DNA of 63,962 bases, the filler included, from Reticulomyxa filosa (taxonomy: Eukaryota > Protista > Foraminifera), in the NCBI GenBank assembly GCA_000512085.1. It is 12 parts of 12 records of this genome, joined end to end, with 100 filler letters (N's around TTAATTAATTAA, not from the genome) between each part and the next. Parts side by side here need not be neighbours in the genome. Positions count along the whole stretch, not along the records: positions 49,415 to 51,727 come from ASPP01026728.1; 11 more parts are not named here. One strand, written 5' to 3'. Shown in pieces: positions 2,863 to 51,827 of this stretch. The notes beneath the pieces were generated by a model. That model searched no databases and was not told the origin of the DNA. It saw nothing but the letters and a program-made list of their open reading frames with translations. A program made the translations under genes and the position numbers. Every line of letters starts with the position of its first letter. The stretch's first letter is position 1.

Positions 2863-3321
2863 TGTAGTACTAATCATTGTCAGAAATCCAAGTAAACATC
2901 AGAACTTTCTTTATTCTGGTTCAAACTCACTTCACTAATCAGTTTTTTGTTCTTCGTACTTTTGCTTGTTTGTTTTGGATTATTATTTTCTCTTTATTTA
3001 ACAAATTTCGTTTTGTTGAAAGTTTGCTCATGATAGCTACTTAACCTTGTAGGGAGTCTACAGTGAAGAGCTTCACTAAATGTAATACGAAATAGTGTTA
3101 CTCTCAATGAGAGTGACTTTCAGTAAACAAAAGTAAATTAAAGAATAAATCAAAGACAAAAGAAGCAAGAGAGAAAACAAGTAAGAGGTAGTTTGTTGAT
3201 GAGGTTTAACACAAAGTGAGCTCATCAGTTCCATAAGCGTTCAGCCATGTGTGATAAGGGCTTGCCCTACAACATTCATATTACACTTTGCACAGTTCTT
3301 TTCAATAACAGACATTCCCCA
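2863..3321 (+). mobile_element. Older diverged copy of the same LTR-like family, interrupted by the 3048-3271 copy
   Basis: 2863 begins TGTAG. 2921-3030 resembles the T-rich middle of 44712-44938. 3272-3321 (ATTCATATTACAC...GACATTCCCCA) resembles its 3' end. Confidence 0.5.
3048..3271 (-). mobile_element. Solo-LTR-like element, 224 bp, TGTAGGG...CCCTACA termini
   Basis: 7-bp terminal inverted repeat. Flanks ACCT/ACAT look like a decayed 4-bp TSD. The reverse complement aligns end to end with 44712-44938 (shared TGTAGGGCAAG, CTGAACG, CTCATCAAC, TTTAATTTACTTTTGTTT, TTTCGTATTACATTTAGT). Confidence 0.8.
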
Positions 3322-4214
3322 ATAATATGCGCTAATATAATACATCTTCGTGTCTTCATCATGATGTTGCAAACATTAGCACCTTTTGCATTTCTAATAC
3401 ATAACAATTTTATTAGTAGTTTTAAAAGAAAAATTCTTTAATTAAATCAAATAAAGATTACAACATATATATGCAAAGTATGTAAATATAATAATTAGCC
3501 TTTTTATTTATTCATGTATGTATATTGAGATAACTATTGGTTTTAACTCACGTGAATATATTTAACATTGAAATAAAAGAGAAAATCAAATTATTGAACA
3601 ATTAGCCAAATATAAACAAACAACATTAACCTTTAATCAATTAGTTCAACTTATTTATGTTGATACTCCTTTACATTTATATTATGCTGCTGAAAAAAAT
3701 GTTTTAAATAAGGTACAAAAATTATCTAATTATAAATGTATTCTTATTCCAACATTTCAAAATAAAAATTATTGATCAAATAAAAAAATATTCTTGTAAA
3801 CAAAAAAGATTTTTGACCATATAATCAAAGCATTTATTAAAATCAATATAAACTCAATCTTAAGAATAGTAATTGTTTTGAAATTTGATAATATAAAGTA
3901 TTACTTTATTCATAAATCTAACAATTGCTAAGCTATTATAATATTTCTTGGAGATTCTATACAAAATTTCAGATTTGACTGATCCAATTTTATTTGTTAA
4001 AAGACCATGTGAATTTTTGTAAAAAAAAAGGATTTACATAAATCAATTCGGTGGTTTCTTTGATTGCTTTTTCAATTTTTGAACGATCTGTTTCTTTCAT
4101 TTGATTTTTGAATTTATGATATATAATTTTATATAGAAAGTAACTTGAACAAAGTAAAATAAACACACTTTAATTTCTTGTTCCATAAAAAAATAAGTTA
4201 ACACCACGAACAAA

Positions 4215-49227: not shown

Positions 49228-49700
49228 TCACAACGATGGCAATATCCATTCAATGAAAGGAATATTAATTGTTATACGTACATGTATTTTGAGGAAAAGA
49301 AAAAGTACTGTATTNNNNNNNNNNNNNNNNNNNNNNNNNNNNNNNNNNNNNNNNNNNNTTAATTAATTAANNNNNNNNNNNNNNNNNNNNNNNNNNNNNN
49401 NNNNNNNNNNNNNNTTTGCTATATCACTCTAATTTTGGCTTGATGAAAGAAAAAAAAAGCATAAATATGCACACTGTCGGAAACTTATCAAAAAAAAAAT
49501 GGTTTGCTCCTTTTTGATATTTACACTTTTGAACTTTTTTTCTTTTTGCTTCCAACCTCGACCTTGAAAGTAATCTTGGGTTCAACACCAACACTGACAA
49601 TTTTCAAAAATACAATGTTTTGTACAACAATGTGCTTTCGACGAGTTTGTCCGGAGACTGTAGCTGCAAAAAGGAACACATAGTATTGATAATAACATAA

Positions 49701-50332
49701 AACCTAGGTGTGACCTCTTTTCGGATAGCTTTCCCCCTCATGAATCATTTTTTAGGTAGGGGACCCTAAGGTTATTAAATCTCGCAAGTGCGAAAGTGCG
49801 CGCTTGTGATGACCAAGCAATACTTTGAGCTCAGAAACACTTAACTCGGATAACATTAAAGGTTAAGTCTGACTATGAAAGTCTGGAAGATAGAGAAACC
49901 CTTATATCTAAGGTTCTCTTATGAAAGATATAGGTCTATATGGTCTATATCATTCATACATTATCTTCCCCTGTTTCGGAGTAGACCTTGGCATAACCGA
50001 TCATGCCTTCCTTGTCTATTCAAAGGACTTAATATGAAGGTAATAAGTTGAATGAAGAATGATCTTTGGTATAATTTTCACTTAGTGAAAGGTGATCTGT
50101 CACGCAGAATAGAATGCTCTTCATTAGGAAGCAGTATGTGTATGATATGGGTGCGCATGATGTACTAGAACATCAGTCAAAATTGCTGCTGCTATTTAGT
50201 AGCATACTGACATCAGATGTCTAAGTTGACTTGATTGATCAACATGTCAAAAACAGCAGGAGCTTTGCTTTGTTGAATAGTGGTACATTGTGACACACCC
50301 GATCCAATGGAAGGTAAATTGAAAAATTTTGC
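49701..50332 (+). ncRNA. Putative large (~630 nt) highly structured non-coding RNA, class unassigned
   Basis: No ORF >=60 aa. Visibly more GC-rich than the flanks. About ten consecutive or nested helices, including multi-way junctions, and the non-Watson-Crick pairs are predominantly G-U on the + strand (details under findings). Confidence 0.7.
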
Positions 50333-50879
50333 ATTAATAAATCAGTTACATAAAAAATAATGTATATTATTATATTATATTACATTCAAGAATATATAAG
50401 ATTAATAGAACGTCGTTTAAAAAAGGCTTTCAATTAAACACAAAGACAGTATATAAACGCAATATCGAAAGATTTACAAGAAGCCATAATTTATAACTAT
50501 TTTTATTTATTAAAAAATATATTCCCAAGAAATCAATTCTTTAAAAAAAATATATGTTAGGATTTTCCTATTGACTCGTGCAAAGACATCGAAGAATTAA
50601 AAATAAATGAAACAATGTCATATTCGGTTGGCAAAAGAAAATATAAAATTAAAAAGATTAATGATAACAAATTTATCCAATTTAACATTAAAGCAAACAA
50701 GACAATTGCAGTTCGAAAAATTGAAAAAAAAAATAATATTAAGAAAGAAAAAGAAATTACTGATTGCATAATATGTAAAAATGATAAACGAACTAATATT
50801 TTATAGCGTGTACTGTATATCGACTTGCAGTCACAAGTTTTAACAAATTTTCATTACATGAATTTTACAAAATATAAAT

Positions 50880-51580
50880 CAAAAAGGGGCCACTTGCATA
50901 GTAGCACTAGTAGTATTATTATCACTTTTTGCATCAGCAGACGCAGCTGTATGCTGAGCTCTTTGTTGTAAATATACTCTTCTTTCTGAGTGTCGTTGTG
51001 AGTAACTCATTACAGACCGCACATATATGACTTGGAATGTTCTTCCTTGACAATCTATCTTCAACAAAAAATCCGCTATTTCCTTCGTGCATAGTTGTGC
51101 TGTGTCACAAGATAATACAAGCCATAAAATATCAGCATTAAACCCAGTTCTACTGCACTTTGCTCGATTATCACCAACAGGACACCTTGAAAAGGAAAGA
51201 GGAAAGATGAGATTGAAAAAAAAAGGACTTTTTTTTGTGTGTTCAGTTCAAAGATGATCACCCCTTTTTTTTTAATCACAAAAAAAAAAAACCGAAAAGC
51301 TCCAAAACCAAAAGAATATACTCACTGATTGTGAGAATATTACATATTTTATAACACGAATAAAACCACTGATACACGTAGCGCGGTGTTTTACTCCCCA
51401 TCGATATGCTATTGACCAACCGATACAAGAAATACTCGATGAGAATTATACCAAACAAATATCATTCGATAGAATATTGAATATACACTCCACAAGAACG
51501 GAAACAGCCATAATCCGATCAACGTCACCACAAAATACGATTGCCTGTGTTTTCTTTTCCAATACACAATACTCGCCTAA
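50880..51580 (-). pseudogene. RNF121/RNF175-like TM-RING E3 ligase, disrupted
   Basis: YWKRKHRQSYFVVTLIGLWLFP, KTPRYVYQWF, GLMLIFYGLYY and ICAVC match RNF121. A frameshift, an in-frame stop and a degenerate RING follow. Confidence 0.7.
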
Positions 51581-51827
51581 CATTTTTGATTTTTTTACGT
51601 TTTCAAAAAGGTTGGACTATGACATTGTTTTCTTTTTAAAAAGACGAAAAAGGCAAGTGAGAACATAGATTTCAAAAGTGAGGATTTGCGAAGTTTTTTT
51701 TTTAAGAAAAAAAAAATTAAAGGTGGTNNNNNNNNNNNNNNNNNNNNNNNNNNNNNNNNNNNNNNNNNNNNTTAATTAATTAANNNNNNNNNNNNNNNNN
51801 NNNNNNNNNNNNNNNNNNNNNNNNNNN

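What the first reader, a model, noticed from the sequence alone, without database searches (positions are those of the whole stretch)
49701..50332. Unassigned ~630-nt multi-junction structured RNA with + strand G-U bias
Seen: an ORF-free island in which most bases can be assigned to helices. (1) AACCTAGG 49701-08 / CCTAAGGTT 49765-73, enclosing TCCCC/GGGGA. (2) TCGCAAGTGCG 49782-92 / CGCGCTTGTGA 49799-809: 11 bp, 2 G-U. (3) ACTTT..TCAG..ACTTAAC / GTTAAGT-CTGA..AAAGT, 49822-82. (4) A three-way junction closed by GGAAGATA 49885-92 / TATCTTCC 49962-69, containing GAGAA-CCTTA/TAAGG-TTCTC and TATGAA-GATATAGGTC/GGTCTATATC-TTCATA (16 bp, 2 G-U). (5) GAGTAGAC/GTCTATTC around GGCAT/ATGCC, 49979-50021. 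(6) ACTTA/TAAGT. (7) TTTCAC/GTGAAA. (8) GTCA-CGCA..TGTG-TGAT. (9) A large domain closed by GAT-TGGGTG 50144-53 / CACCCG-ATC 50296-304 and ATGTACTA/TGGTACAT, holding TAGA-CATC/GATGTCTA, TGCTGCTA/TAGTAGCA and TTGAC/GTCAA. (10) A terminal AAATT-GAAA-AATTT GNRA hairpin overlapping an Sm-site-like AATTTTG. The wobbles would be A-C mismatches on the minus strand. Inference: selection on an RNA fold rather than DNA palindromy. A loop-loop contact (UCGG 49846 with CCGA 49997) is possible. An internal T6 run argues against Pol III. I see no convincing RNase P/MRP, SRP, spliceosomal snRNA or rRNA signature. Candidates are a divergent telomerase RNA, an snR30/U17-type or other large snoRNA, a mobile-element RNA, or a new ncRNA class.
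Basis: partly seen in the sequence, partly recalled or inferred. Interest (0 to 1): 0.9.

Follow-up and report, generated by a model that had tools for sequence, protein, structure and literature searches.

The report
Unassigned hairpin-rich non-coding island, foraminiferan DNA
A roughly 530-630-base stretch without genes in a Reticulomyxa-like foraminiferan scaffold folds into hairpins far more stably than chance, but it matches no known RNA family, has no detectable relatives, and could not be shown to be transcribed, so what it is remains open.

Summary
The island 49701-50332 folds far better than dinucleotide shuffles: z = -5.7 on +, -3.8 on -. Nine 632-nt control windows from this piece and two related contigs give z between -1.0 and +1.1.

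The signal comes from a few very stable modules:
- hairpin 49782-49809
- three-way junction 49885-49969
- hairpin or long-range helices around 49975-50021
- long stem 50144-50304

The global fold is not unusually well defined. The two largest modules fold equally well on both strands, so the + strand G-U bias is modest.

Rfam gives nothing. rRNA similarity is at chance level. There is no coding signal. Metagenome, prokaryote, viral, phage and plasmid collections hold no copy.

The right flank is a frameshifted, truncated copy (82% identical) of a Reticulomyxa filosa transmembrane RING-finger gene, so this is rearranged nuclear foraminiferan DNA.

Best guess (about 0.3): an orphan + strand structured RNA. 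A mobile-element RNA or a purely DNA-level cluster of inverted repeats is nearly as likely. Telomerase, snoRNA and RNase P/MRP readings have no support.

The parts
49778..49813 (+). Hairpin of 11 bp with 2 G-U pairs (49782-49792 / 49799-49809), followed by a C-box-like GTGATGA at 49806-49812
   Evidence: z -4.2 on +, -2.5 on - with 150 shuffles. Pair probability 0.96. Box positions.
49810..49993 (+). Multi-branch domain favoured by the + strand ensemble. Long-range helices 49810-17/49987-93, 49821-29/49975-83 (3 G-U) and 49832-34/49971-73 enclose hairpins 49839-46/49861-68 and 49871-74/49880-83 and the three-way junction.
Evidence: Pair probabilities 0.88-0.96.
49885..49969 (.). Three-way junction: closing helix of 8 bp, an arm of 5+5 bp, and an arm of 16 bp with 2 G-U. 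The long arm overlaps a 9-10-nt tandem repeat at 49928-49950.
   Evidence: z -4.4 on +, -4.5 on -, so it is strand-symmetric. Tandem repeat. Probabilities 0.90-0.95.
49975..50025 (+).
   Evidence: z -3.2 on +, -1.8 on -. It is mutually exclusive with the long-range helices.
50144..50304 (.). Long-stem domain. The closing stem 50144-50167 / 50281-50304 has 22 bp with 4 G-U on +. The interior is poorly defined on + and better defined on -.
   Evidence: z -3.4 on +, -3.2 on -. Stem p 0.93 on +. On the - strand, helix 50263-50251/50197-50185 has p 0.97.
49701..49773 (+). Not significantly structured.
   Evidence: z +0.65 on +, +1.0 on -.
50026..50143 (+). Small hairpins, not better than chance.
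   Evidence: z -0.3 on +.
50296..50345 (+). Terminal GAAA hairpin with the Sm-like AATTTTG. Not better than chance.
   Evidence: z +0.6 on +. Only one AT(3-6)G site is found.
50363..50386 (.). AT-only microsatellite (period 5 and 8) about 30 nt past the island
   Evidence: Tandem Repeats Finder.
50889..51691 (-). Context: truncated, frameshifted copy of a multi-pass transmembrane RING-finger gene. It keeps the N-terminal membrane part and the first C-x2-C and lacks the C-terminal RING exon.
   Evidence: 82% identity over 894 columns to R. filosa contig ASPP01019851.1. Deletions of 23, 10 and 10 nt fall inside what is one open frame in that contig. The frames switch 1 to 0 to 2, and the C-terminal exon is not found by tblastn.

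Best explanation
The core of the island (about 49778-50304) is an orphan, lineage-specific structured non-coding RNA locus read from the + strand.

It has two independently stable modules. One is a multi-branch domain, 49810-49993, built around a three-way junction. The other is a long-stem domain, 50144-50304. A 5' hairpin at 49782-49809 precedes them.

Such an RNA would most plausibly act as a protein-binding scaffold of an RNP. That part is inferred, not shown.

What is shown: the excess folding energy, its concentration in these modules, the absence of coding signal, and a modest + strand advantage. What is inferred: transcription, the strand, and any function.
For: - Whole-island z is -5.7 on + against -3.8 on -. 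Nine control windows of the same length give z between -1.0 and +1.1.
- Four modules are each significant on their own.
- The helices are nested: three inside a closed junction, which sits inside further long-range helices with p about 0.9. One inverted duplication or a pair of transposon terminal repeats would not produce that.
- The + strand holds more G-U pairs (26 against 14). Helices 49782-49809, 49821-29/49975-83 and the 22-bp stem carry 2, 3 and 4 G-U pairs that would be A-C mismatches on the other strand.
- The island has 35-42% G+C, the level of exons here, against 19-25% in the AT-rich spacer to its right. It has no ORF above 63 codons and no Pfam hit. That points to constraint or to recent origin.
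Against: - No homologue was found, so there is no covariation and no sign of conservation.
- The two largest modules fold equally well on both strands.
- The global fold is not better defined than in shuffles.
- The 26:14 G-U excess is only nominally significant. It partly reflects the G>C skew of the + strand.
- The domain boundaries were chosen after seeing the hairpins, which inflates the per-domain z-scores.
- The setting is a short scaffold beside a broken gene copy, in a genome with 30.5% repeats. Junk and mobile DNA are common in such places.
- No promoter or terminator can be named.
Confidence: 0.3

Rival explanations
1. Mobile-element RNA. The island is the structured non-coding part of a retroelement or other mobile element read from the + strand, for example the 3' UTR of a 5'-truncated non-LTR element. 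Its stem-loops would serve recognition by the element's own enzyme.
For: - The fold is stable and better on +.
- An open + frame ends with TAA at 49698-49700, immediately before the island.
- An AT microsatellite lies about 30 nt after it. From general knowledge, non-LTR elements often end in simple repeats.
- The scaffold is short and lies in duplicated DNA of a genome with 30.5% repeats.
- G+C is above the neutral level with no ORF, which fits a young insertion.
Against: - There is no reverse-transcriptase, endonuclease or transposase signal in any frame of the piece. The one RVT_N hit, at E = 0.05, is in an AT-rich low-complexity ORF.
- No second copy was found anywhere searchable, although the R. 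filosa genome itself could not be searched.
- No target-site duplication or terminal repeats are seen at the island's edges.
Confidence: 0.25
2. DNA-level cluster of short inverted repeats with no RNA function. The hairpins would be by-products of local inverted or tandem duplications in rearranged, decaying DNA next to a pseudogene.
For: - Both strands fold significantly (z -3.8 on -).
- The three-way junction and the 161-nt domain are strand-symmetric.
- The longest hairpin overlaps a tandem repeat of a self-complementary AT-rich unit.
- The global fold is not better defined than in shuffles.
- The neighbouring gene copy is broken by 10-23-nt deletions, and its homology ends abruptly at 50889. 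Together these show local rearrangement.
Against: - Nested junction architecture needs several independent events.
- The + strand keeps an advantage of about 2 z units after correction for composition.
- G+C is well above that of the AT-rich spacer to the right of the island.
Confidence: 0.25
3. Part of a messenger RNA. On the - strand it would be an intron or UTR, running downstream of the broken RING gene or upstream of a possible terminal exon with a good acceptor at about 49675. On the + strand it would be a 3' UTR.
For: - The - strand has a pyrimidine tract plus CAG just before an open frame at 49674-49523.
- A + frame stops at 49698-49700.
Against: - None of the flanking frames has any family or homologue.
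- The mean intron in R. filosa is 87 nt, so a 650-nt or longer intron would be unusual.
- The fold is better on +, which is antisense to the - strand reading.
Confidence: 0.1
4. Fragment of a very divergent organellar ribosomal RNA, either in mitochondrial DNA or as a nuclear insertion of it. Foraminiferan mitochondrial rRNAs are truncated and hard to recognise.
For: - Retarian mitochondrial genomes are very AT-rich, with large spacers and truncated, divergent rRNA genes that standard tools miss (bioRxiv 10.1101/2023.02.03.527036).
- By eye, several short strings resemble conserved 16S and 23S motifs.
Against: - The best blastn score against E. coli 16S/23S is 21.1 bits, and 82% of dinucleotide shuffles reach that score.
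- Rfam finds no rRNA match at E <= 10, even on the island alone.
- The flank is a nuclear-type gene copy.
- The authors of that paper found no mitochondrial genes in the R. filosa contigs.
Confidence: 0.03
5. Telomerase RNA, with 49698-49706 as the template.
For: - A three-way junction and a 9-nt string could in principle template a 7-nt repeat.
- A related rhizarian, Plasmodiophora, uses T4AG3.
Against: - The string gives only 2 nt of redundancy. It does not fit T4AG3.
- It lies in the part of the island that is not significantly structured.
- Foraminiferan telomeres are undescribed, so nothing can be matched.
- There is no Rfam telomerase hit.
- The Sm-like 3' element is no better than chance.
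Confidence: 0.02

Closest known systems
Large scaffold RNAs of RNPs with three-way junctions (for example the CR4/5 / TWJ region of telomerase RNA); comparison from general knowledge
   Same: Several hundred nucleotides long, modular, with independently stable stem-junction modules, no coding capacity, and G+C above that of the AT-rich spacer.
   Different: There is no credible template, no pseudoknot, no supported 3'-end element and no match to any Rfam telomerase model. Transcription is not shown.
Structured 3' UTRs of non-LTR retrotransposons and their SINE partners (general knowledge)
   Same: Sense-strand stem-loops follow the end of an open frame and precede a simple AT repeat.
   Different: No reverse-transcriptase remnant, no demonstrated multiple copies and no target-site duplication.
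Foldback / MITE-type inverted-repeat elements (general knowledge)
   Same: Both strands fold much better than shuffles.
   Different: There is no pair of terminal inverted repeats spanning the element. The structure is a set of nested short helices, and the + strand is favoured.
Truncated, divergent mitochondrial rRNA fragments of Retaria (bioRxiv 10.1101/2023.02.03.527036)
   Same: A structured, ORF-free island richer in G+C within AT-rich DNA of a foraminifer. It is invisible to standard RNA family models.
   Different: Similarity to bacterial rRNA is at chance level. The flank is a nuclear gene copy.

Membership tests
Any Rfam 15 family | Covariance-model score at or near the family's gathering threshold | tested here: not met
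   On the whole piece the best hit is 22.8 bits against a threshold of 50 (snR57, outside the island). On the island alone the only hit is snoR125, at 19.1 bits against 100.
Telomerase RNA | Template complementary to more than one telomere repeat of the organism | not testable with these tools
   Foraminiferan telomere repeats are undescribed. The proposed 9-mer has only 2 nt of redundancy.
Telomerase RNA | Match to known telomerase RNA models or structured core | tested here: not met
   No Rfam telomerase hit. The template region folds no better than chance.
RNase P / MRP RNA | CR-I and CR-V strands forming P4 | tested here: not met
   A GAAAGTC string at 49877-49883 resembles CR-I. Downstream partners pair over 6 bp at most, at three unrelated sites. 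No Rfam RNase P or MRP hit.
C/D box snoRNA | C box (RUGAUGA) and D box (CUGA) brought together by a terminal stem | tested here: not met
   One exact C box at 49806, with CTGA at 49869 and 50207. The flanks are not complementary (read). In the ensemble the C-box bases pair elsewhere.
H/ACA snoRNA (snR30/U17 type) | Hairpin - H box - hairpin - ACA, with pseudouridylation-type internal loops | tested here: inconclusive
   The stable hairpins lack large internal loops. The ends of any transcript are unknown, so the ACA position cannot be judged. No Rfam hit.
Sm-class snRNA | Sm site flanked by stable stems, plus conserved snRNA sequence | tested here: not met
   There is a single AATTTTG at 50325, in a segment with z +0.6. 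No U1, U2, U4, U5, U11 or U12 hit.
Ribosomal RNA (including organellar) | Significant collinear similarity to SSU or LSU rRNA | tested here: not met
   The best blastn score against E. coli rRNA is reached by 82% of shuffles. No Rfam rRNA hit. Curated foraminiferan mitochondrial profiles were not available.
MITE / foldback transposon | Terminal inverted repeats at the element's ends, target-site duplication, many copies | tested here: inconclusive
   No terminal inverted repeats or flanking direct repeats at the island's edges. Copy number in the R. filosa genome could not be tested.
Non-LTR retroelement 3' end | Upstream RT/ORF2 remnant, 3' simple repeat or poly(A), multiple 5'-truncated copies | tested here: inconclusive
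   A 3' AT microsatellite is present, and an open frame ends at 49700. There is no RT signal. Copies could not be tested.

The most novel reading that the evidence does not exclude
A foraminifer-specific structured non-coding RNA of about 530-630 nt from a family not yet described. It would be transcribed from the + strand and would serve as the scaffold of an RNP. This could be a very divergent form of a universal RNA that standard models cannot recognise in Foraminifera.
Probability: 0.2. Interest if true: 0.6.

Novelty: new member of a known kind. Interest (0 to 1): 0.3.

Why it matters
Almost nothing is known about non-coding RNAs of Foraminifera. Their telomeres, telomerase RNA and several universal RNAs are undescribed.

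A confirmed large structured RNA in R. filosa would be a first handle on that biology. It might also reveal a strongly diverged form of a universal RNP RNA.

As it stands, the evidence is a single-sequence thermodynamic signal in a repeat-rich, rearranged region. The finding is a reasonable candidate to check against RNA-seq, not a discovery.

Tried and rejected
**Known RNA families**
- Rfam at E <= 10, on the piece and on the island alone, gave nothing real.
- No tRNA or tmRNA.

**Ribosomal RNA**
- By eye, several strings looked like conserved 16S and 23S motifs.
- blastn against E. coli rRNA (L003) gave a best E of 2.2.
- 82% of shuffles score as well. Rejected.

**Coding sequence or pseudogene in the island**
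- All stop-to-stop frames of 36 aa or more gave no Pfam hit.
- The 63-aa frame had no look-alike among 5.8 billion proteins in its length range.
- A ciliate-code reading was considered. It was dropped because the neighbouring exon uses only CAA/CAG for its seven Gln codons.
- The missing C-terminal RING exon of the neighbouring gene is not hidden in the island (tblastn, all E > 1.9).

**Homologues of the island by exact DNA pattern**
- Two metagenome scans, two prokaryote-genome scans and two viral scans all gave zero.
- blastn against phages and plasmids gave no match.

**Source contig by exact ORF look-ups**
- Not on record.

**Flanking gene**
- The exons were searched one at a time by reference.

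**Motif checks**
- P4 partner of the GAAAGTC string, C/D boxes and Sm site gave nothing convincing.
- Group II intron: 5' GTGTG at 49707, and domain-V likeness of hairpin 49782-49809. Rejected by eye, and by the absence of Rfam Intron_gpII and group-II-D1D4 hits.

Their questions were answered by later calls.
- The Reticulomyxa genome paper is not held.

Full report
**What is in the sequence**

The piece (49415-51727, 2313 nt) is AT-rich. G+C is 19-31% in most 150-nt windows and 35-42% between about 49565 and 50314.

The island has no ORF longer than 63 codons between stops, in any frame. None of its nine frames of 36 aa or more hits Pfam at E < 0.01. ARAGORN finds no tRNA.

**Is the structure more than chance?**

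For 49701-50332 the minimum free energy is:
- + strand: -185.3 kcal/mol against -152.3 +/- 5.8 for 100 dinucleotide-preserving shuffles, z = -5.7.
- - strand: -161.0 against -137.1 +/- 6.3, z = -3.8. The tool's 20-shuffle runs gave -5.1 and -3.7.

Nine control windows of the same length give z between -1.0 and +1.1. Two come from this piece, five from the R. filosa contig L001 and two from L002. The excess is real and local to the island.

In 150-nt sliding windows only 49865-50014 (z -4.5 on +, -4.9 on -) and 49940-50089 (-2.5, -2.2) stand out.

|---|---|---|
| 49778-49813 | 2 | -4.2 / -2.5 |
| 49885-49969 | 4 (three-way junction) | -4.4 / -4.5 |
| 49975-50025 | 5 | -3.2 / -1.8 |
| 50144-50304 | 9 | -3.4 / -3.2 |
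| 49818-49884 | 3 | -1.6 / -0.7 |
| 49701-49773 | 1 | +0.65 / +1.0 |
| 50026-50143 | 6-8 | -0.3 / -1.6 |
| 50296-50345 | 10 (GAAA hairpin with 'Sm-like' site) | +0.6 / +0.4 |

These boundaries were chosen after the hairpins had been seen, which inflates the per-segment values. The whole-island value does not have that problem.

Four of the ten elements carry the signal, one is marginal, and the rest are what any sequence of this composition would offer.

**Architecture**

Base-pair probabilities on the + strand support these helices with p of 0.9 or more:
- the 11-bp hairpin 49782-92/49799-809
- the three helices of the junction at 49885-49969
- the hairpin 49839-46/49861-68
- the 22-bp stem 50144-67/50281-304

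They also support long-range helices 49810-17/49987-93, 49821-29/49975-83 and 49832-34/49971-73.

The interior of the 50144-50304 domain is poorly defined on +. It is better defined on the - strand, where a 12-bp helix has p 0.97.

Overall the fold is not unusually well defined. It has 81 pairs with p >= 0.9 against 45 +/- 26 in shuffles (maximum 83). Mean positional entropy is 0.95 against 1.18 +/- 0.28.

The statement 'most bases can be assigned to helices in a multi-junction RNA' therefore goes beyond the evidence. 'A handful of unusually stable hairpins and one clean junction' is what is shown.

**Strand**

The + MFE holds 26 G-U pairs and the - MFE 14. Among pairs with p >= 0.5 the counts are 20 and 12.

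The + strand is G-rich relative to C in its 3' half. That alone favours G-U pairs, and the shuffles correct for it. A difference of about 2 z units remains.

The 5' hairpin, the helix 49821-29/49975-83 (3 G-U) and the 22-bp stem (4 G-U, one C-A) favour +. The junction and the 161-nt domain are symmetric. I read this as a modest, not decisive, preference for +.

**What it is not**

- **Rfam 15.** At E <= 10, with lax filters, nothing real comes up on the piece or on the island alone. The only island hit is snoR125, at 19 bits against a gathering score of 100.
- **Ribosomal RNA.** I was briefly persuaded by eye that conserved 16S and 23S strings were present. Against the E. coli operon (L003) the best blastn hit has E = 2.2. 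82% of dinucleotide shuffles do as well. The idea is rejected.
- **Divergent mitochondrial rRNA.** Foraminiferan mitochondrial rRNAs are truncated and divergent (bioRxiv 10.1101/2023.02.03.527036). I could not test against curated profiles, so a small residual probability remains.
- **RNase P/MRP.** A GAAAGTC string resembles CR-I, but no convincing P4 partner exists.
- **C/D snoRNA.** One exact C box and two CTGA boxes exist, without a terminal stem.
- **Telomerase RNA.** The proposed template is a 9-mer with 2 nt of redundancy in a non-significant segment. Foraminiferan telomeres are undescribed, and Plasmodiophora uses T4AG3, which it does not fit.

**Context and organism**

A full HMMER scan with the 101-aa open stretch 50882-51184 (- strand) found one real relative. 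This is P0001, 'putative RING finger protein [Reticulomyxa filosa]', on contig ASPP01019851.1 of GCA_000512085.1.

At the DNA level, 50889-51691 is 82% identical over 894 columns to that contig. The homology stops at 50889.

Two sequences show the true gene is a multi-pass membrane protein with a split RING finger (from memory it resembles RNF121; not tested):
- an intact relative from an ENA metagenome, P0003
- the ORF at L001 3020-3331, which holds the CGH-FH-C...CP-C half of a RING

In our piece the copy lacks 23, 10 and 10 nt inside what is a single open frame in L001. As a result the frame switches 1 to 0 to 2. The C-terminal RING exon is absent from the piece (tblastn E > 1.9). It is therefore a truncated pseudogene.

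The piece is nuclear DNA of R. filosa or a very close relative, in a duplicated and rearranged region. That assembly has 50,809 scaffolds with N50 of 3.6 kb, 30.5% repeats and a mean intron of 87 nt (PMC13746701).

The exons of this gene were searched one at a time by reference.

**Search for relatives of the island**

- Exact-pattern scans with 21-25-mers from four modules found nothing in JGI metagenomes, GTDB genomes or IMG/VR.
- blastn against phage and plasmid collections found nothing.
- The 63-aa frame has no protein look-alike.
- Exact look-ups of twelve ORFs of the piece are not on record.
- The tools gave no way to search the R. filosa genome itself at the DNA level.

So copy number, conservation, covariation and transcription are all untested.

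**Weighing the explanations**

The energy signal needs a cause.

Nested helices are hard to get from a single inverted duplication or from transposon terminal repeats. Here a closed junction sits inside further long-range helices. Together with the + strand advantage and exon-level G+C without an ORF, this tilts me to RNA-level structure, at about 0.55 in total. I split that into:
- an orphan cellular structured RNA, 0.3
- the structured non-coding part of a mobile element's transcript, 0.25

For the mobile-element reading, an open + frame stops at 49698-49700 and an AT microsatellite follows at 50363-50386. No RT or transposase remnant exists.

Against RNA-level structure:
- The largest modules are strand-symmetric.
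- The longest hairpin overlaps a self-complementary tandem repeat.
- The fold as a whole is not well defined.
- The neighbourhood is visibly decaying.

A DNA-level cluster of inverted repeats without RNA function gets 0.25. The remaining readings are:
- mRNA intron or UTR, 0.1
- organellar rRNA fragment, 0.03
- telomerase RNA, 0.02

**Verdict**

This is a real but partly over-read observation. It belongs to no known family, and the decisive data could not be reached here. It is a fair candidate for a quick RNA-seq and copy-number check in R. filosa, and no more than that at present.

Noticed in passing
window 50889-51691 (- strand); L001 2024-2914: Truncated, frameshifted paralogue of an R. 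filosa transmembrane RING-finger gene, 82% identical at the DNA level. Deletions of 23, 10 and 10 nt break a frame that is open in L001. The C-terminal RING exon is missing, and homology ends abruptly at 50889.
   Followed up: yes
L001 2049-3331 (R. filosa ASPP01019851.1): The deposited model P0001 ('putative RING finger protein') stops at 3023. It omits the adjacent ORF 3020-3331, which holds the second half of the RING (CGHHFHDFCIRGW...CPVC) and a C-terminal membrane segment. Its N-terminal part also seems to read through non-coding stretches. The gene model looks wrong.
   Followed up: partly
window 49523-49674 (- strand): An open frame of about 50 codons ends in a Lys-rich tail and TAA. 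It is preceded on the - strand by a pyrimidine tract plus CAG, which looks like a splice acceptor. It could be the last exon of an unannotated gene. No Pfam hit.
   Followed up: partly
No Pfam hit.
   Followed up: partly
window 50615-50806 (+ strand): A 63-aa Lys/Asn/Ile-rich ORF in the 21% G+C spacer gives a weak RVT_N (reverse transcriptase N-terminal) Pfam hit: E = 0.05, 14 bits against a cut-off of 28. Probably a low-complexity artefact.
   Followed up: no
window 49440-49500, 51215-51295, 51690-51720: Many A or T homopolymer runs of 9-12 nt lie in the spacers, several arranged as A-run/T-run inverted pairs (repeat finder I2-I9).
   Followed up: no
L002 (ENA ERZ893790 k147_2560359, 3222 nt, 24% G+C): A metagenome contig from an unidentified AT-rich eukaryote carries an intact, intron-less relative of the same transmembrane RING gene (P0003, 33% identity). 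Next to it are a second weak RING protein and an ATP-synthase epsilon gene.
   Followed up: no
P0002 (632 aa, from the representative library): The second hit of the HMMER scan is a protein made of about 10 tandem repeats of some 60 aa. It matched a 40-aa stretch of the query seven times at 31% identity. I judge it a spurious repeat-driven hit.
   Followed up: no
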